A DNA stretch of 64,000 bases from assembly GCF_001194135.2 (NCBI RefSeq), contig NC_068989.1:81175646-81239645 (forward strand), in the 5' to 3' direction. Position numbers and translations under genes: made by a program. Below are positions 323 to 59,420 of the stretch, one piece after another. The DNA comes from Octopus bimaculoides. Lineage: Eukaryota. Positions within the stretch are counted from its first letter, which is position 1, and the number at the start of each line of letters is the position of its first letter. The notes under the pieces are model-generated. The model was not told where the DNA came from. It did no database searches and saw nothing but the letters and a program-made list of their open reading frames with translations.

Positions 323-678
323 GATGACTTCTGACCGAGACCTTTGGAAATATGCTGTGCGTGAGAAGACCCGGCAAGCCAAGTGAGACCTAAATCCAAG
401 GCCTCTGCCAGGGGTGTAGCCAGCCCACTAATGCGTACCTTTCCTTCATTTGACACTAAACTCCGCCTGACTGACCTTCGTGCCGGTGGCACGTAAAAGC
501 ACCCACTACACTCTCGGAGTGGTTGGCATTAGGAAGGGCATCCAGCTGTAGAAACTCTGCCAAATCAGATTGGAGCCTGGTGAAGCCATCGGGTTTCATC
601 AGTCCTCAGTCAAATCGTCCAACCCATGCTAGCATGGAAAGCAGACGTTAAACGACGACGATGATGATGATGATGATG
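323..678 (+). mobile_element. RTE-clade LINE 3' end with (GAT)n tail
   Basis: Encodes ...MTSDRDLWKYAVREKTRQAK*, followed by the 3' UTR shared with many copies here, ending gttaaacgacgacgatgatgat. Confidence 0.85.
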
Positions 679-3541: not shown

Positions 3542-3691
3542 TAATAATAAAACATAACAATACAAAAAAATGCAACTAAAGATAAATATATATTTTTTAA
3601 AAAACTGTTAAAAGTGCAAAGGACTTACATGAACATTTGTTGGCCTTGAAACATTTAAACGTTCTTGGCTTGATGATATAGAATTACATAC

Positions 3692-3808
3692 TTCTTGTTC
3701 AGGTTCTCTGGAATCATCTTTATCTAAAGATACTTCTTCTTCAGTTTCTAGTTGTTTTTCTTCTGATATAGTATATCTTGCGTCAAAGCTTTCTTTATCA
3801 GATGCTTC
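3692..3808 (-). CDS. GBF1: GBF1 exon 9: EASDKESFDARYTISEEKQLETEEEVSLDKDDSREPEQE
   Basis: gtgtttttgaatctag| acceptor, GAA|GTATGT donor; 117 nt, phase 0 to 0. Acidic composition fits the linker, but it is not recognisably conserved. Confidence 0.8.
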
Positions 3809-4929: not shown

Positions 4930-5805
4930 TAGAAGCATCAGTTGTGGTGTGCAAGAGAGACGATTGCGCTGGTATGGACATGTGGTGAGAATGGATGAGG
5001 ATAGCTGCGTGAAAAAGTGCCACACCCTAACAGTTGAGGGAACCCGTGGAAGAGGTAGGCCCAGGAAGACCTGGGCTGAGGTGGTGAGGCAAGACCTTCG
5101 TACATTGGGCCTCACCNNNNNNNNNNNNNNNNNNNNNNNNNNNNNNNNNNNNNNNNNNNNNNNNNNNNNNNNNNNNNNNNNNNNNNNNNNNNNNNNNNNN
5201 NNNNNNNNNNNNNNNNNNNNNNNNNNNNNNNNNNNNNNNNNNNNNNNNNNNNNNNNNNNNNNNNNNNNNNNNNNNNNNNNNNNNNNNNNNNNNNNNNNNN
5301 NNNNNNNNNNNNNNNNNNNNNNNNNNNNNNNNNNNNNNNNNNNNNNNNNNNNNNNNNNNNNNNNNNNNNNNNNNNNNNNNNNNNNNNNNNNNNNNNNNNN
5401 NNNNNNNNNNNNNNNNNNNNNNNNNNNNNNNNNNNNNNNNNNNNNNNNNNNNNNNNNNNNNNNNNNNNNNNNNNNNNNNNNNNNNNNNNNNNNNNNNNNN
5501 NNNNNNNNNNNNNNNNNNNNNNNNNNNNNNNNNNNNNNNNNNNNNNNNNNNNNNNNNNNNNNNNNNNNNNNNNNNNNNNNNNNNNNNNNNNNNNNNNNNN
5601 NNNNNNNNNNNNNNNNNNNNNNNNNNNNNNNNNNNNNNNNNNNNNNNNNNNNNNNNNNNNNNNNNNNNNNNNNNNNNNNNNNNNNNNNNNNNNNNNNNNN
5701 NNNNNNNNNNNNNNNNNNNNNNNNNNNNNNNNNNNNNNNNNNNNNNNNNNNNGCTAGCATGGAAAGCGGACGTTAAACGATGATGATGATGATGATGATG
5801 ATGAT
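4930..5805 (+). mobile_element. RTE LINE C-terminal ORF and 3' end, spanning a gap
   Basis: RSISCGVQERRLRWYGHVVRMDEDSCVKKC...GRGRPRKTW is a typical RTE C-terminus; (GAT)n tail after the gap. Confidence 0.85.
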
Positions 5806-6598: not shown

Positions 6599-6630
<32 letters not shown>

Positions 6631-7204
6631 NNNNNNNNNNNNNNNNNNNNNNNNNNNNNNNNNNNNNNNNNNNNNNNNNNNNNNNNNNNNNNNNNNNNNN
6701 NNNNNNNNNNNNNNNNNNNNNNNNNNNNNNNNNNNNNNNNNNNNNNNNNNNNNNNNNNNNNNNNNNNNNNNNNNNNNNNNNNNNNNNNNNNNNNNNNNNN
6801 NNNNNNNNNNNNNNNNNNNNNNNNNNNNNNNNNNNNNNNNNNNNNNNNNNNNNNNNNNNNNNNNNNNNNNNNNNNNNNNNNNNNNNNNNNNNNNNNNNNN
6901 NNNNNNNNNNNNNNNNNNNNNNNNNNNNNNNNNNNNNNNNNNNNNNNNNNNNNNNNNNNNNNNNNNNNNNNNNNNNNNNNNNNNNNNNNNNNNNNNNNNN
7001 NNNNNNNNNNNNNNNNNNNNNNNNNNNNNNNNNNNNNNNNNNNNNNNNNNNNNNNNNNNNNNNNNNNNNNNNNNNNNNNNNNNNNNNNNNNNNNNNNNNN
7101 NNNNNNNNNNNNNNNNNNNNNNNNNNNNNNNNNNNNNNNNNNNNNNNNNNNNNNNNNNNNNNNNNNNNNNNNNNNNNNNNNNNNNNNNNNNNNNNNNNNN
7201 NNNN

Positions 7205-7620: not shown

Positions 7621-8079
7621 CTGTGCTGGTATGAGTTGGATGGCTTGATAGAATCCAACAAGGGTTGTGCCCTATTTTAAAGTCTGCTTTGGTATGTATT
7701 TTATGGCTAGATACCCTTCCTAATACTTTTCAATGCAATGGGTACATTCTTTTTCCTAGTACCTGGGTGGAGGTAGCAAAAGTATAGGGAGAGTGAGGAA
7801 TGGTTAGAGATGGGGTAAGGGTATAAATATAGTGAATGATGAACATGGGTTGAGGCAGTGTGTGTNNNNNNNNNNNNNNNNNNNNNNNNNNNNNNNNNNN
7901 NNNNNNNNNNNNNNNNNNNNNNNNNNNNNNNNNNNNNNNNNNNNNNNNNNNNNNNNNNNGGGGGGGGGGGGGGAAAGGTAGTCAATGGTAAATATGAGTG
8001 TGATGGAAAGTAAAGAAGAGTAGATAACAGCTAGAAAATGGGAAACGTGTGTGTGTGTGTGCATATTATATCATCATCA

Positions 8080-8345
8080 TCAATTAACATGCATTTTCCT
8101 TTCTGGCAGGGTTGGACAGTTTGACAGGAGCTAATAAGGCCAGGAGCTGCAGTAGGCTCCATTGTTTTGGTATGGTTTCTATGGCTGGATGCCCTTCCTA
8201 ATGCCAACCACTTTATAGAGCATACTGGGTGCTTTTTACGTGGTACCAGTACCAGTGCTATTTATATGGTGCCAACACCAGTGTTTTTTACATGGCACCA
8301 GTGCTTTTTATGTGGCACCAACACTTTTTACATGGCACTAGTGCC
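8080..8345 (-). mobile_element. Degenerate RTE 3' UTR with an internal ~22-bp tandem array
   Basis: ggctggatgcccttcctaatgccaacc followed by repeated gtgctttttacgtggcacca-like units. Confidence 0.65.
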
Positions 8346-9031
8346 AGTGCATGTTACGTAGCACATACCCTTTTATCTGTCAGTCTGTCAACTGAATTGT
8401 CACCATTATACGTGATGGGGTTTTACACAATTTCCATTTACCAAATTCCACTTACATAATATTGGTCAACCCAATGCTACAGTAGAAGACACTTGCTCAC
8501 ATTGTTATTTAGTGAACTTCTTAACCACACAGCCATGCTTGCAGTCAATGTTGAATAAAGCAATTAGATCGAAGGGATAATACATGACTCATCAAAGTAA
8601 ATGAAAATTAAAAAAATAACCAATTGATAATTGCTAATTAATAATGAAAAAAAGAGAGTAAGATGCAAGCTAGTCAGGATCCAGAAAATATATGAACTCC
8701 ATATAAACTGAAGTTGCATAGTTAAGGACTTTAATATATAAACGAGAGGTTAGTTTTGCAAATAAAAATTCAAATGATAAGAACTGAAAATTCCCAAAAC
8801 AAAGAAAAATTGTATTAGAGAAACAAAAATAAAATGTCCAAAAGAAAAATCTTCCCCACAAGCAGATAATACCAAGAGCAGCAAAAAACAAAAATTAAAA
8901 AGGGACCAATTTGGGAGCAAGACAAATAAAAATAAATTAAATTGAAAAAGAGTGAGTGTATGTTTTTAGAATGGGTATATCAGGGAAAGTGTTTTTAATA
9001 TTTTGTTTTTTAATGCAATTCTCATAGTTAC

Positions 9032-9049
9032 CTCCAGCTCAGAATCTTG
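9032..9049 (-). CDS. GBF1: Candidate alternative 18-nt microexon of GBF1 (QDSELE)
   Basis: Minus strand reads tttcatatttttttttacaattccaTGCttttttacag|CAAGATTCTGAGCTGGAG|gtaact. Frame-preserving in a phase-0 intron. No transcript evidence. Confidence 0.6.
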
Positions 9050-10137
9050 CTGTAAAAAAGCATGGAATTGTAAAAAAAAATATGAAATATTCCTTCTAGA
9101 CTAAATTCGATGGAAATATGTATAGTTGCAATTGCCACTAGGCTAATAACAGAAAAATATTCAGCATGATGTTGAGAAAATTAAAAAACAATGTCTTAAA
9201 TAAAAAGAAATAACACACATTCAACTTGCTAATTAGAACCATATTAAAAATGATGATGTGTATTAAATTATCTGGATCTTCAAACTTATTCTCTCTCTCT
9301 CCCTCTCCTGATGTGCACAGCAAAGGCAATAGACTGCGACAATATTTTCAGTCTCTATATTTTGTTAAAAACTGATAAAAGTTATTTAATTAGCTGGATA
9401 CTGAGTAGAAATGTGCATTATAAATTTTAGCTGTCCATGTATACTGCATAAATTGTAGATGGTTATTTATATATTTCTTTTTGACTGTTTTACCCGACAC
9501 CTCATCCAACTGGTTGAGTGAGCTATAATTTAGAGCAATTATGTAAATTAGTAAAGTATTTTGAGTAAAAACAAAAAAGAGCATGTTTTCCCAAACATAA
9601 AGAAAAAAAAACAAGAGTAAAATTATATTTTAGGTTTGATATCTTCTGTTTTTGTTTCTCCAAATTTTTATGCAGCCCAACTTGAACCATCTTAATTTCA
9701 TGAAAGCAACAATCCGGAATCTATCAAAGTTTCTAGATTAAATAAGCAAAAATGATTTCTTTTGACGATGCTAATTTTTAATGGAATGTCAATATTTGAA
9801 TTGATTTCAATATATGACTGGTATCTATTTTGTTTGATTAACCTTGAGGTAAATTAAGCTCAGATGGACGAGATTACACACTGCAAATCATTTAATCCAG
9901 GGCTCTGCTATTTTGGCCCAAGTTTCACTCCTGCTTTATCTGATCTTTCACTTGATTCAGTCAGAGAACCCCTTTAAGGAATTTTACTTGAACAAATTGA
10001 ACCCAGTATTTATTTTTATTTTTTCAAGACTGTTACTTATTCTACCAATTCTCTTTTGCCAAACTGCTAAGTTACAGGTATGTAAGCACATCAACTGCTT
10101 GGCAACTAGGATATATATAAAAATGACAGGCTTCTTT

Positions 10138-12003: not shown

Positions 12004-12190
12004 CCTTGGATGGGAAGCCAGTCCATCACAGGATAATTTTGAATATACTACATATGTTATTGTGTTATTAAAAAAAAAAAAAAGGTAGTGTAGTATTTTG
12101 CTTGAGAATGCTTTGAAATGCTATGTAGTTGAAGCAAACAGAAATAGATTTTCTGAATCTATCAAATACTTTAGAAAAACAAATGAATAC

Positions 12191-12643
12191 CTGAAAGCTG
12201 TTATTGATATCAATTACAGTTTTTTCCATTGGTAAAGCAGCAGGCGTCGTGGCTATGATTTCATCTGGTGCAGTTTCATGGACACCGTCGGATGACTGAA
12301 CTGATTCAGAAAGTTCACTTTCATTATTTAAGTCTTTGATCTTCCTATCACTTTCAATTCTGTTTTCCTCTGCACTAGTTTCATTTGTTACTGATGCATT
12401 GGTTGGAGAAGTAGTAGTTGTGGCTGTTATTGTGGATGATGAAGATGATGATCCCGATACTGGTGTCCCTATAGAAACTGGTGCAGATGAAGTATTCCCA
12501 TTCTTTATGCATTCATTGCTCTGCCGTGTGATCTGTGGATGCATTGAAGCATGTTGAGAGTTCATTTTGTCATGTTTCCGCTTGGGTGAGCGTTTCTTTT
12601 TGCCCATCCGTGATGGTTCAACACTGCCAGTCCTCATCTTTAG
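12191..12643 (-). CDS. GBF1: GBF1 exon 8: LKMRTGSVEPSRMGKKKRSPKRK...EKTVIDINNSFQ (Ser/Thr/acidic linker, 151 aa)
   Basis: Starts LKMR as in human GBF1. CAG| acceptor, CAG|GTATTC donor; 453 nt, open, phase 0 to 0. Confidence 0.93.
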
Positions 12644-16878: not shown

Positions 16879-17039
16879 AAACAAATACCAGTTGCCAAAT
16901 AGTGTGTGACAAACACAGACACAGACACACATACAGACATATATATATATATATATATATATTGATGTGTCATGTGTCTTTGGAATTCCACAATATACAT
17001 GTATGTGTGGTGTGTATATATGTATATATATGTATATAC

Positions 17040-17089
<50 letters not shown>

Positions 17090-18316
17090 CCTAATAAGTA
17101 GGAAGGTAGATAAAACACAAACCCCTTCAGGTAGATGGCCCTGCTCAGTATGTAGAAAAGGAGTAGGTAGTAACTCTATAAGATGTACCCGGTGCAAGCT
17201 ATGGACACATAAGAGGTGAAGCAACATCAAAGGCAGGTTAACTAGCAAGTTAGTTTTTGTTTGTGGCAGATGTTCAGGTGCAATAAAGACTGTAAACAAA
17301 CAGGAAACAACTTCTANNNNNNNNNNNNNNNNNNNNNNNNNNNNNNNNNNNNNNNNNNNNNNNNNNNNNNNNNNNNNNNNNNNNNNNNNNNNNNNNNNNN
17401 NNNNNNNNNNNNNNNNNNNNNNNNNNNNNNNNNNNNNNNNNNNNNNNNNNNNNNNNNNNNNNNNNNNNNNNNNNNNNNNNNNNNNNNNNNNNNNNNNNNN
17501 NNNNNNNNNNNNNNNNNNNNNNNNNNNNNNNNNNNNNNNNNNNNNNNNNNNNNNNNNNNNNNNNNNNNNNNNNNNNNNNNNNNNNNNNNNNNNNNNNNNN
17601 NNNNNNNNNNNNNNNNNNNNNNNNNNNNNNNNNNNNNNNNNNNNNNNNNNNNNNNNNNNNNNNNNNNNNNNNNNNNNNNNNNNNNNNNNNNNNNNNNNNN
17701 NNNNNNNNNNNNNNNNNNNNNNNNNNNNNNNNNNNNNNNNNNNNNNNNNNNNNNNNNNNNNNNNNNNNNNNNNNNNNNNNNNNNNNNNNNNNNNNNNNNN
17801 NNNNNNNNNNNNNNNNNNNNNNNNNNNNNNNNNNNNNNNNNNNNNNNNNNNNNNNNNNNNNNNNNNNNNNNNNNNNNNNNNNNNNNNNNNNNNNNNNNNN
17901 NNNNNNNNNNNNNNNNNNNNNNNNNNNNNNNNNNNNNNNNNNNNNNNNNNNNNNNNNNNNNNNNNNNNNNNNNNNNNNNNNNNNNNNNNNNNNNNNNNNN
18001 NNNNNNNNNNNNNNNNNNNNNNNNNNNNNNNNNNNNNNNNNNNNNNNNNNNNNNNNNNNNNNNNNNNNNNNNNNNNNGCGGGTGGCACATAAAAGACACC
18101 ATTTCGAGCGTGGCCGTTTTCGTGCGGGTGACACGTAAAAGCACCCACTACACTCTCTGAGTGGTTGGCGTTAGGAAGGGCATCCAGCTGTAGAAGCTCT
18201 GCCAAATTAGACTGGAGCCTGGTGTTGCCATCCGGTTTCACCAGTCCTCAGTCAAATCGTCCAACCCATGCTAGCATGGAAAGCGGATGTTAAACGATGA
18301 TGATGATGATGATGAT
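17090..18316 (+). mobile_element. RTE LINE fragment with a Cys-rich PHD-like finger, gap, then 3' UTR and (GAT)n tail
   Basis: GRWPCSVCRKGVGSNSIRCTRCKLWTHKR...CGRC; the RTE 3' UTR resumes at 18078. Confidence 0.75.
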
Positions 18317-45358: not shown

Positions 45359-45552
45359 TATCAAGAAATATTAACAATAGGTATTATAGAGTTGGTTCAG
45401 TTCTCATTTCTTTATTATTATTGTTTTTTTTGGTTGAATCTTGAAATAACTGTAGTCAGCTTAAACGGATAAAAATACTTCCAACAACATGCTAATGAAT
45501 ATTGATTAATGTTTAAATGGAAAAGCACACTGAATAGATGCCAAATTCTTAC

Positions 45553-45657
45553 TTGGTGACTGTGTGTAGTCCATCGAGTAGTTCTTCTCATAGCAGTCAC
45601 AACTAGAGATATTTCACCTTGGATTATGTAAATTCCATATTTTGGAGGGCCCATCAT
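45553..45657 (-). CDS. GBF1: GBF1 first coding exon (exon 2): MMGPPKYGIYIIQGEISLVVTAMRRTTRWTTHSHQ
   Basis: Resembles the GBF1 N-terminus (human ...IYIIQGEINIVVGAIKRNARWSTH). Donor CAA|GTAAGA at 45552. Acceptor TTTTTTCAG| puts the exon start at 45671, leaving a 14-nt 5' UTR, so an untranslated exon lies upstream. 105 nt, phase 0. Confidence 0.95.
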
Positions 45658-46289
45658 GACAGGTTACTAGTCTGAAAAAATATATAATAATTTTAGTAAA
45701 ATATAATTAGCTTTGGTATTATTATTTATGAACAACAATTAGCTGGCATTAAAAAAAAAAAACATAAAGAGATTTGGCAAGGGCAAACCATAAAAGGTTT
45801 AGCAAGGTATCAATCAGGTCAACTGAAAAAAAAAATCATTTCCAGTATACAATTCATGTTGAAATCTTCAATGTGGAAACCTACATACAAGCAACTCAGT
45901 AAAAAAAGGGACCTAAAACCCTTCTTTTGTTACTTCCCAAATGTAAAGATTTTACTTCATCAAAAGTCTTTTTAATTTGTTATATACAAAGTTGCCTTGA
46001 GTAGGGTTTGACTGTAAAACTATATAGTGCAGAAAGGGCCAAGAGAGCAGATTGGTGGTTTACTGATACAGAAATACAAACCAGGACTTGATCAACCCTG
46101 GCTGGATCAACTAAGGGAGGGGGTCTGATGTTGAAAGACCTGAAACCCCTAAAGACCCCAGAATCATGCACTATCAGTGGATAGTGCATCCCAGAGCATC
46201 CAGGATATGTATCTTGGAACAAAGCACTGAAAAATTGAATATAATTGAATATATGTTTCCTGACCATATAATTCAATGGATGCAACTGA

Positions 46290-57489: not shown

Positions 57490-58540
57490 CAGACTCCATC
57501 AACTGCCAGAGGGGTGAGCTAGTGGTAATAGATAGCTTCCATTATCTAGGCAACCAAGTTAGTTGCAGAGGTAAATACTCCAAGAGCATAGCTGTAAGAA
57601 TAAGATTAGGCTGGGCAAAGCTCAGAGAGTTCCTATCTCTGCTGGCAACAATGGGTCTCTTTCTCAGAGTGAAAGGCAGATTGTATGATGCTTGTGTGCA
57701 AACAGCTATGCTACATGGCAGTGAAACATGGGCTGTGACAGCCAAGGACATGTGTAAGCTTGAATGAAATGAAGCCAATATGCTTTGCTGGATGTGCAAT
57801 GTCAGTGTGCATGTTTGACAGAGTGTAAGCATCTTGAGGGAAAAGTTAGGCATAAGAGGCATCAGATGTGGTGTGTGAAAGAGACAGCTGTGCTGGTATG
57901 GCCATGTGATGCATATGGATGAGGACAGCTATGTAAAGAAGTGCTGATCTCTAACTGTAGAGGGAACCTGTGGTAGAGGTAGACCTCAGGAAGACATGAG
58001 ATGAGATGGTGAAGCATGGTCTTTGAACTTTGGGCCTCACAGAGGCAATGACTAGGGACTGAGACCTTTGGTGATATGTTGTTTTTGAGAAGACCTGTCA
58101 AGCCAAGTCAAATCGCAATCATGGCTGATGCTGGTGTCACATAATTGGTACCCATGCCAGTGACACATAAAAAGCACCTTTCGTGTGTTGGGCCTCACAG
58201 AGGCAAAATAGCTGAGCTTTTTTCGAGTGTTGTGCCTCATGGAGGCAATGGCCGAGACCTTTGGCATTATGTCGTGCTTGAGAAGAAGACTCATCAAGCC
58301 AAATGTAATCGCCATTGTGGCAGATACCCGTGTCACACAAATGGCATCCGTGCCTGTGGCACATAAAAGCACCCATTATACTCTTGGAGTGGCTGGCATT
58401 AGGAAGGGCATCCAGCTGTAGAAACCATGCCAAATCAGACGGGAGTCTGGGGCAGCCTTCCAGCTTGCCAGCCCCTGTCAAACCATCCAACCCATGCCAG
58501 CATGGACAATGGATGTTAAATGATGATGATGATGATGATG
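57490..58540 (+). mobile_element. RTE LINE 3' 1 kb (post-RT C-terminus and UTR), with stops
   Basis: DSFHYLG...RIRLGWAK...KGRLYDACVQTAMLHGSETWAVT; (GAT)n tail. Confidence 0.9.
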
Positions 58541-58639
58541 GTTACTGCCATTGATTTCAAATTTGTAAGTGTTTGAAGGAGAGGATTTAAGAAAAAAAAA
58601 GTTTAAAAATAAATTTGCTTGGGATTGGACAGATGTGTT

Positions 58640-59420
58640 TGTGATTACAGGATATAATTCTTTTATTGTTCTGTTGCTTCATCTCATTGTTTTGGTGCAT
58701 CATGACATTTTACACCATGCAGATAAATCTGAGCAACAACTTCCCCAGGATGTCAAATATAAGCTGTAGAAATTTTAGTGATTGCTTCAACTTATCCTTA
58801 TTCTTACACATAAGGACAGGTCTTCCTTTAACACAGTATCCCTCTACTTGTTGGCTATACAAAAAAACTTTTTCAGAACTTTTCAGTACTTGTAGCCTTA
58901 GATATTGTAATATTAATTTCATCATCAAGAGTACTCTTAAAGTTTATTGTACTTCCGAGATACTTAAATAATCCAACCCACTTGAGTGGCTTATTGTCAA
59001 TCATCACATTTAAATCTTGAGTATGTTCTGTCCCAGGCTTTGGTTGGAATAAAACTTCAGTCCTCTTGATTTTGATAGTCAGGCCAAATGCATAGGTTGC
59101 TGTAGCAAACCTGTTGGCTATTCCCTGAATTCCCTCAAATGTTTGAGAAATCAAAGTACAATCATCAGCAAACAGGAAACCATGAAGAAATTCTTCCTTG
59201 GTCCTTGCCCTTTTAGGTTTAGTAGACCTCCTGTGCATAACTGAATTTTTTTTTTAGGTTTGTGGATCTCATTTGTTATTGAAGCCTGTGCAGCAAATTT
59301 CATCTTCAGCACTCTTGAGCTACCAACCTTGCATCCAACAACCTTTTCCCCACATGGCTTTAATATGCACCAGAGTCTAGTTATTTGAACAAGAGAGTGT
59401 GATGGGTGACACAAACCTGT
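58640..59420 (-). mobile_element. RTE-BovB-like reverse transcriptase relic
   Basis: FLFADDCTL...FGLTIKIKRTEVLFQPKPG...FKYLGSTI; FADD at 59161-59172. Confidence 0.85.

What the first reader, a model, noticed from the sequence alone, without database searches (positions are those of the whole stretch)
9032..9049. Candidate neural microexon (18 nt, QDSELE) in cephalopod GBF1 with the SRRM4/eMIC UGC signature
Seen: in the 8.4-kb phase-0 intron between exons 8 and 9, the minus strand reads tttcatatttttttttacaattcca-TGC-ttttttacag|CAA GAT TCT GAG CTG GAG|gtaact. It has a long pyrimidine tract, no other AG for about 45 nt, UGC at -13 to -11, a strong donor, and a stop-free length divisible by 3. 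Inclusion would give ...NNSFQ-QDSELE-EASDK in the linker. Established: bilaterian neural microexons (3-27 nt) are activated by Srrm2/3/4 eMIC proteins via UGC near the 3' splice site, and are enriched in vesicle-trafficking genes. Inference: a neuron-specific GBF1 isoform. From memory, and unverified, human GBF1 has a one-Gln splice variant at a comparable linker junction (about residue 337), which would point to a shared or convergent site.
Basis: partly seen in the sequence, partly recalled or inferred. Interest (0 to 1): 0.8.

Follow-up and report, generated by a model that had tools for sequence, protein, structure and literature searches.

The report
Real alternative 18-nt microexon in GBF1
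The 18-base segment is a genuine exon of an octopus-like GBF1 gene that public RNA data show is either included or skipped depending on the sample. It adds six amino acids (QDSELE) to a flexible linker, but whether it is nerve-specific could not be tested here.

Summary
The sequence is exactly as described: minus strand ...ccaTGCttttttacag|CAAGATTCTGAGCTGGAG|gtaact, window 9032-9049. It lies in an 8,382-nt phase-0 intron of a GBF1/Gea-family ARF-GEF gene. Public RNA data show the exon is used. Assembled transcripts of 8 runs, and raw reads of 3 more, join ...AACAGCTTTCAG to CAAGATTCTGAGCTGGAG to GAAGCATCTGAT... exactly as predicted. Transcripts of 10 other runs join the two flanking exons directly. 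Both forms occur within single studies, and three raw-read runs give roughly 54%, 84% and 88% inclusion. So this is a true cassette microexon whose use switches between samples. DNA runs of five other organisms keep 43% of the sampled 31-mers around it. They keep none in a control intron stretch 400 nt away, and two of them keep 100% in the next coding exon, which points to a conserved island. Not shown: neural specificity (tissue labels are coded) and dependence on an eMIC protein. The UGC alone is weak evidence, since a TGC precedes 31% of all AGs in this intron. The Py tract lacks UCUC and there is no strong branch point. The remembered human one-Gln variant could not be checked. Verdict: a correct prediction of an ordinary kind of feature, and a new member of a known kind.

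The parts
9032..9049 (-). 18-nt cassette microexon CAAGATTCTGAGCTGGAG, encoding QDSELE
   Evidence: Sequence. The exact 18 nt sit between exon 8 and exon 9 in RNA contigs and in the raw-read consensus. They are absent from the contigs of 10 other runs.
9050..9092 (-). 3' splice-site region: AG at 9051-9050, a U-rich tract, and a 41-nt AG-free zone (previous AG at -45)
9060..9062 (-). UGC at -13..-11, the candidate SRRM/eMIC-type enhancer motif
   Evidence: By chance a TGC is present before 31% of AGs in this intron.
9071..9071 (-). Candidate branch-point A (uuuAc, -22). A second candidate, uucAu, lies at -34 (9083).
   Evidence: yUnAy scan. This is an inference only. No CUAAY-type strong branch point is present.
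9026..9031 (-). 5' splice site GAG|gtaact
   Evidence: Its use is shown by the junction CTGGAG|GAAGCA in RNA.
12191..12643 (-). Upstream exon (453 nt, ...TVIDINNSFQ) with donor CAG|gtattc
   Evidence: and contig pieces. The same ...NNSFQ| boundary is seen in two other cephalopod DNA contigs.
3629..3808 (-). Downstream exon (180 nt, EASDKESFD...PTNVH)
   Evidence: and contig pieces
1498..1687 (-). Next exon (KSISETELNS...DFVNPRGIRFMPQQYPKE), the end of the acidic linker
   Evidence: The contig continuation before 3629 reads into it.

Best explanation
This is a genuine, frame-preserving 18-nt cassette microexon of the GBF1 gene, a Golgi ARF guanine-nucleotide exchange factor, in an octopus-like cephalopod. 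The spliceosome either uses the AG at 9051-9050 and the GT at 9031-9030, giving ...NNSFQ-QDSELE-EASDK..., or skips the segment, giving ...NNSFQ-EASDK.... The choice differs sharply between RNA samples, so it is regulated, most likely by tissue or cell type. Shown: use of both junctions, the existence of both isoforms, sample dependence, and an island of exact sequence identity around the exon in other species. Inferred: the exon is too short for normal exon definition, and its 3' splice site has a long AG-free zone and no strong branch point. Inclusion therefore probably needs an activator bound near the 3' splice site. The leading candidate is an eMIC-bearing Srrm234 isoform acting through the UGC at -13, which would make inclusion neuronal. 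I put neural enrichment at about 0.5 and eMIC dependence at about 0.4. Also inferred: the six residues lengthen the acidic, Ser-rich, presumably disordered linker after the DCB domain. They add a Ser in a CK2-type context (S-E-L-E).
For: Sequence anatomy. Inclusion: in X1-X4 one 6.3-6.9 kb contig per run carries 18 extra letters between exon 9 and exon 8. In X1 the letters after exon 9 read (CT)CCAGCTCAGAATCTTG+CTGAAAGCTGTTAT, the reverse complement of the microexon followed by the end of exon 8. X8, X10, X11 and X14 show the same. The raw reads of X20, X21 and X22 (15, 12 and 11 reads) have the same consensus. Skipping: in X5, X6, X7, X9, X12, X13 and X15-X18 the contig reads ...TTATCAGATGCTTC directly followed by CTGAAAG. 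Both forms occur inside studies P2, P3 and P4. Read agreement of 0.66, 0.88 and 0.91 corresponds to about 54%, 84% and 88% inclusion, and the three off-consensus letters in X20 are those of the skipped form. Conservation: five other organisms keep 0.43 of the 31-mers in 8960-9120 and none in control intron 9450-9610. Two of them keep 1.00 in exon 9. Rarity of the signal. Gene identity: DCB domain PF16213 at E=7e-8 and yeast Gea2 (7uro) at E=3e-25.
Against: Nothing argues against the exon being real and alternative. Against the neural/eMIC part: tissue labels were not available. The skipped form is the assembled one in 10 of 18 contig runs, including all four runs of study P5, where GBF1 depth is highest. 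UGC is common by chance (31%). No UCUC-rich tract or CUAAY branch point is present, although the literature lists both for eMIC exons. UGC is also not strictly required for, or specific to, SRRM4 targets. Logan contigs drop minor variants, so 'dominant form' is not a PSI value. The position of the conserved 31-mers inside the 161 nt is unknown.
Confidence: 0.9

Rival explanations
1. The microexon is tissue-regulated but not neural and not eMIC-dependent. Inclusion could be the default in many tissues, with skipping in particular ones such as embryo, gonad or secretory tissue. Or another factor could drive it, for example a muscle, epithelial or developmental regulator.
For: All four runs of the 2015 study carry the exon, and 8 of 18 contig runs do overall. 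The three deep raw-read runs all have majority inclusion. UGC is expected by chance in 31% of cases, and the UCUC tract and strong branch point are missing.
Against: Most sharply tissue-switched microexons known in bilaterians are neuronal (established knowledge). The 3' splice-site layout fits that class: UGC between a candidate branch point and the AG, and a 41-nt AG-free zone. No Rbfox GCAUG lies within 300 nt on either side. Public cephalopod RNA sets are rich in neural tissue, so 8 of 18 is compatible with a neural exon.
Confidence: 0.45
2. It is a constitutive exon that the reader merely failed to count, with no alternative splicing.
For: Long contigs run straight through the exon in 8 runs without a break.
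Against: Ten runs have equally long contigs (up to 6.86 kb) that lack the 18 nt. The raw reads are mixed.
Confidence: 0.01
3. It is a chance AG...GT pseudo-exon in an intron that is never used.
For: 145 in-frame, stop-free AG..GT segments exist in this intron.
Against: The exact 18 nt are in mature transcripts of 11 runs. Only this candidate reaches its own signal values. There is a conserved island around it.
Confidence: 0.01
4. The conserved island reflects something other than the exon, such as an intronic enhancer or a conserved repeat that happens to lie beside it.
For: The 31-mer test does not say where in 8960-9120 the kept words lie. Only one control stretch was tested.
Against: The stretch is not repetitive, since RNA-contig depth there is low. 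The same share, 0.43, is seen in five organisms. Conserved flanks are the rule for regulated microexons.
Confidence: 0.12

Closest known systems
Neural microexons activated by eMIC proteins (vertebrate SRRM3/SRRM4, invertebrate Srrm234 eMIC isoform)
   Same: The length is 18 nt, a multiple of three, and the exon lies in a disordered linker of a membrane-trafficking protein. A UGC sits close to the 3' splice site, downstream of a candidate branch point, and the AG-free zone is long. Use looks switch-like between samples, and the surroundings are conserved in related species (literature).
   Different: Neural restriction and dependence on an eMIC protein are untested. The Py tract is oligo-U without UCUC, and no strong CUAAY branch point is present. 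The donor lacks G at +5.
Cytohesin-1 3-nt (one-Gly) microexon, another ARF-GEF with a functionally distinct microexon isoform
   Same: It is a small in-frame microexon in an ARF exchange factor that gives two protein isoforms (review PMC6724607).
   Different: That exon lies in the folded PH domain and changes lipid specificity. This one lies in a low-complexity linker after the DCB domain, and its effect is unknown.
Reported human/hamster GBF1 splice isoforms (Claude et al. 2003, as cited in PMC3776844)
   Same: The gene family is the same, and the isoforms are reported to differ by small in-frame changes (from memory).
   Different: From memory those are alternative splice-site choices of 1 and 4 residues, not a separate exon. 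Here the 18 nt lie 3.1 kb and 5.2 kb from the neighbouring exons. The positions could not be compared.

Membership tests
Alternatively spliced cassette microexon (3-27 nt) | Length of 3-27 nt, flanked by AG and GT | tested here: met
   18 nt, AG at 9051-9050, GT at 9031-9030
Alternatively spliced cassette microexon (3-27 nt) | Both junctions are used in mature RNA | tested here: met
   ...TTTCAG|CAAGAT... and ...CTGGAG|GAAGCA... are seen in contigs of 8 runs and in raw reads of 3 runs
Alternatively spliced cassette microexon (3-27 nt) | A skipped isoform also exists | tested here: met
   A direct exon 8-exon 9 junction is seen in contigs of 10 runs. The raw reads are mixed.
Alternatively spliced cassette microexon (3-27 nt) | Frame preserved | tested here: met
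   Phase-0 intron, 6 codons, no stop
eMIC (Srrm234 / SRRM3/4)-dependent neural microexon | Inclusion enriched in neurons or neural tissue | not testable with these tools
   Run, sample and study names are coded. No tissue marker locus could be laid.
eMIC (Srrm234 / SRRM3/4)-dependent neural microexon | UGC near the 3' splice site, between branch point and AG | tested here: met
   UGC at -13..-11, with candidate branch-point A at -22. The weight is low, because a TGC precedes 31% of AGs in this intron.
eMIC (Srrm234 / SRRM3/4)-dependent neural microexon | Long AG exclusion zone | tested here: met
   41 nt
eMIC (Srrm234 / SRRM3/4)-dependent neural microexon | Py tract enriched in UCUC, and a strong branch point (CUAAY) | tested here: not met
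   The only TCTT/CTCT match in the 300 nt upstream of the exon is at -159, so the Py tract holds none. No CTAAY lies in the 70 nt upstream.
eMIC (Srrm234 / SRRM3/4)-dependent neural microexon | Inclusion depends on the eMIC protein and on the UGC | not testable with these tools
   Needs a minigene or a knock-down
GBF1/Gea family of large ARF-GEFs (host gene) | N-terminal DCB domain | tested here: met
   PF16213 at E=7e-8, above the curated cut-off
GBF1/Gea family of large ARF-GEFs (host gene) | Closest solved relative belongs to the GBF1/Gea branch rather than BIG/Sec7 | tested here: met
   Only yeast Gea2 chains matched (7uro, 8ezj; E=3e-25)
GBF1/Gea family of large ARF-GEFs (host gene) | HUS and Sec7 catalytic domains | not tested
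   They lie beyond the start of the window. The window ends in the intron after the linker exon 1498-1687.
Tandem-acceptor (NAGNAG-type) small indel variant | Extra residues come from an alternative splice site of a neighbouring exon | tested here: not met
   The 18 nt are a separate exon, 3,141 nt from exon 8 and 5,223 nt from exon 9

The most novel reading that the evidence does not exclude
The exon is a neuron-specific, Srrm234-eMIC-dependent GBF1 isoform conserved across octopods. It would add a phospho-regulatable acidic hexapeptide to the DCB-HUS linker and tune Golgi ARF activation in neurons. It might lie at the same ancestral phase-0 intron position where vertebrate GBF1 also varies, making that position a recurrent hotspot for isoform evolution.
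Probability: 0.15. Interest if true: 0.5.

Novelty: new member of a known kind. Interest (0 to 1): 0.35.

Why it matters
The result shows that a sequence-only reading of splice signals can pick a real 18-nt exon out of an 8.4-kb intron. It gives GBF1, the essential cis-Golgi ARF activator, a regulated and conserved isoform in a cephalopod. If the labelled tissues show a neural switch, it would add a lophotrochozoan example to the microexon programme, which has been studied in detail mainly in vertebrates and flies. It would also point to the little-understood DCB-HUS linker as a regulated part of GBF1. As it stands it is one more regulated microexon. Any RNA-guided annotation of this genome probably already contains it.

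Tried and rejected
1. The protein database search with exon 8 + microexon + exons 9-10 returned only two genomic ORF fragments of exon 8 from other cephalopods. No transcript-derived GBF1 came back, so isoforms in other species could not be read.
2. The contigs behind those fragments end 0.2-0.5 kb into the intron, short of any microexon.
4. A protein search with the intronic ORFs around the microexon found nothing.
5. Organism B (X19) did not align at 80% likeness.
6. Laying contigs on exon 9 alone showed no loose ends, because they ran off the stretch.
7. Raw reads at the exon 8 edge produced six loose-end rows that the tool did not print, so there are no direct read counts per form. PSI is therefore only estimated from consensus agreement.
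8. RNA editing as a proxy for neural origin gave nothing: no variant letters in exons 8-9 of X20-X22.
9. Literature: no paper links GBF1 to a microexon. The bilaterian tissue-splicing preprint that includes an octopus has no GBF1 mention and no held supplements. Claude et al. 2003 is not held.
10. Rejected readings: constitutive exon, unused pseudo-exon, NAGNAG variant, and an Rbfox-driven exon (no GCAUG within 300 nt).

Full report
**Observation**

The minus strand of the window reads ...atatttcatatttttttttacaattccaTGCttttttacag|CAAGATTCTGAGCTGGAG|gtaactatgag.
- The 18 nt are window 9049..9032, the acceptor AG is 9051-9050 and the donor GT is 9031-9030.
- The TGC lies at -13..-11 (9062-9060) and the nearest upstream AG at -45, which leaves a 41-nt AG-free zone. 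Pyrimidines make up 76% of -40..-3.
- The donor GAG|GTAACT matches 7 of 9 consensus positions but lacks G at +5, so it is good rather than strong.
- The 18 nt encode QDSELE.
- The upstream exon (12643..12191, 453 nt) ends ...TVIDINNSFQ with donor CAG|gtattc. The downstream exon (3808..3629, 180 nt) starts EASDKESFD.
- The intron is 8,382 nt, of which 1,304 are assembly gaps, and it is phase 0.

**Is it more than chance?**

The intron holds 145 in-frame, stop-free AG...GT segments of 3-27 nt. Only this one reaches its own combined values for Py content, AG-free zone and donor match. Just four such segments exist in the whole window on both strands.

The UGC is different. A TGC lies at -30..-4 before 31% of all AGs in this intron, and also before exon 9, for which no skipped form was seen. 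UGC is reported in 74-79% of SRRM3/4-dependent microexons (bioRxiv 10.1101/2024.09.17.613571). By my own division of those figures, the motif raises the odds only about 2.4-fold.

**Host gene**

Minus-strand exons at about 45.6, 27.5, 25.0, 24.5, 23.4 and 13.9 kb encode an N-terminus and a DCB domain. The DCB domain is PF16213 at E=7e-8, above the curated cut-off. The only solved relatives are chains of yeast Gea2, the GBF1 orthologue (7uro and 8ezj, E=3e-25).

The gene is therefore a GBF1/Gea-type large ARF-GEF. The microexon lies in the low-complexity, acidic, Ser/Thr-rich linker after the DCB domain. The HUS and Sec7 domains lie outside the window. The exon numbers 8 and 9 assume a non-coding first exon, which I did not check.

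**Is the exon used?**

Yes.
- In four RNA runs of a 2015 study (X1-X4), one 6.3-6.9 kb contig per run aligns to exon 9 and to exon 8 with exactly 18 unaligned letters between them.
- In X1 the letters after exon 9 are (CT)CCAGCTCAGAATCTTG followed by CTGAAAGCTGTTAT. That is the reverse complement of the microexon followed by the end of exon 8.
- The same junctions are seen in X8, X10, X11 and X14.
- Raw reads of three 2026 runs (X20, X21, X22, with 15, 12 and 11 reads leaving exon 9) have the same consensus.

**Is it alternative?**

Yes. In ten runs (X5, X6, X7, X9, X12, X13, X15-X18) the contig reads ...TTATCAGATGCTTC directly followed by CTGAAAG. That is exon 9 joined to exon 8 without the 18 nt. 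Several of these contigs are as long as 6.86 kb.

Both forms occur within the same studies:

| Study | Skipped | Included |
|---|---|---|
| P2 | 3 | 1 |
| P3 | 2 | 2 |
| P4 | 1 | 1 |

All four listed runs of P1 include the exon and all four of P5 skip it.

In the raw reads the loose-end agreement is 0.66, 0.88 and 0.91. The two forms share 8 of 30 letters there, so this corresponds to about 54%, 84% and 88% inclusion. The three positions where the X20 consensus departs from the inclusion form carry the letters of the skipped form. These PSI values are rough. A direct count failed because the tool did not print the six loose-end rows. Logan contigs keep only the dominant variant, so the contig tally shows which form dominates, not exact levels.

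**Conservation**

Orthologous introns could not be fetched. The 31-mer index gives a proxy instead.
- For the 161 nt around the microexon (8960-9120), DNA runs of five other organisms each hold 0.43 of the 14 sampled words.
- For a unique control stretch of the same intron 400 nt away (9450-9610), only the window's own species holds any word.
- For coding exon 9, two of those organisms hold all 15 words.

This indicates an island of exact identity around the microexon, intermediate between a coding exon and neutral intron. Regulated microexons typically have such conserved flanks. The limits are a single control, and the unknown position of the kept words within the 161 nt.

Separately, the exon 8 donor boundary ...NNSFQ|gt is the same in two other cephalopod DNA contigs, which are 88% and 40% identical in exon 8.

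**Mechanism**

Shown: two isoforms produced by inclusion or skipping of a separate 18-nt exon, with the choice set by the sample.

Inferred: an 18-nt exon cannot be defined by the usual cross-exon contacts. Its 3' splice site has a long AG-free zone, oligo-U rather than a UCUC-type tract, and only weak branch-point candidates (uuuAc at -22, uucAu at -34). Inclusion therefore probably needs an activator near the 3' splice site.

The best-described activator for such exons in bilaterians is the eMIC domain of Srrm234/SRRM3/4. It acts with U2AF and SF1, is helped by a UGC between branch point and AG, and is restricted to neurons (PMC8797185). The layout here fits in part. UGC and the AG-free zone are met, while the UCUC tract and a strong CUAAY branch point are not.

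No Rbfox GCAUG lies within 300 nt. I put neural enrichment at about 0.5 and eMIC dependence at about 0.4.

At the protein level, the insert extends an acidic linker and adds a Ser followed by E-L-E, a CK2-type context. This is inference from the sequence only.

**What could not be tested**

Tissue labels are coded, and no marker locus of this organism could be used. The central claim of the interpretation, neuron specificity, therefore stays open.

The remembered human one-Gln variant was not verifiable. One paper confirms that three human GBF1 isoforms were reported (PMC3776844), but the source paper is not held. In any case the present feature is a separate exon, 3.1 and 5.2 kb from its neighbours. 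It is not a tandem splice-site variant.

No paper in the library links GBF1 to a microexon. A 2026 preprint analyses tissue-specific splicing in 20 bilaterians, including an octopus, so the event may already sit in such data sets.

**Verdict**

It is an alternatively spliced, apparently conserved microexon in the GBF1 linker. The neural/eMIC reading is plausible but untested, and only partly backed by the cis-elements. This is a new member of a well-known kind, of moderate to low surprise. The inclusion form dominates many public transcriptomes, so RNA-guided annotations very likely contain it already.

Noticed in passing
window 456-599, 831-1115, about 16970-17200 and 18100-18241, 58140-58541 (minus); 8167-8361 (inverted): A SINE-like repeat recurs through the introns. 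Read on the minus strand it gives ...LQSNLAEFLQLDALPNANHSESVVGAFTCHPHENGH.... Several repeat-rich stretches of the intron reach RNA-contig word depths of 10^3-10^4, far above the GBF1 exons.
   Followed up: no
window 58876-59253 (minus): An open reading frame with a reverse-transcriptase-like FADD motif (…LFADDCTLISQTFEGIQGIANRF…) lies upstream of the GBF1 start-codon exon. It is probably a LINE fragment.
   Followed up: no
window about 5100-5700, 6600-7200, 7850-7950, 17300-18100: Runs of N are present, 1,304 of them inside the 8.4-kb intron. The window comes from a draft assembly, so the true intron length is uncertain.
   Followed up: partly
window 12185-12190 (minus strand donor of exon 8): Exon 8, which was present in every GBF1 contig examined, has a poor donor, CAG|gtattc. 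The acceptor of exon 9 also has a weak Py tract with a TGC nearby. Weak flanking sites may matter for the microexon's regulation.
   Followed up: no
window about 45421-45663 (minus): The GBF1 start-codon exon (MGPPKYGIYIIQGEISLVVTAMRRTTRWTTHSHQ) lies here. About 18 kb of intron then precede the next coding exon at about 27.5 kb. The 5' third of the gene fills most of the window.
   Followed up: partly
RNA runs X3, X4, X5, X9 versus X1, X2, X10, X14: Some runs have a longest contig of about 40-41 kb, perhaps a giant transcript. Others top out at about 16-16.8 kb, the size of a mitochondrial genome. This does not track inclusion or skipping of the microexon.
   Followed up: no
window 3640-3800 (exon 9): All 15 sampled 31-mers of this acidic, low-complexity linker exon are identical in DNA runs of two other organisms. 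A nearby intron stretch shares none, so nucleotide-level constraint looks unusually strong for a linker that is presumably disordered.
   Followed up: no
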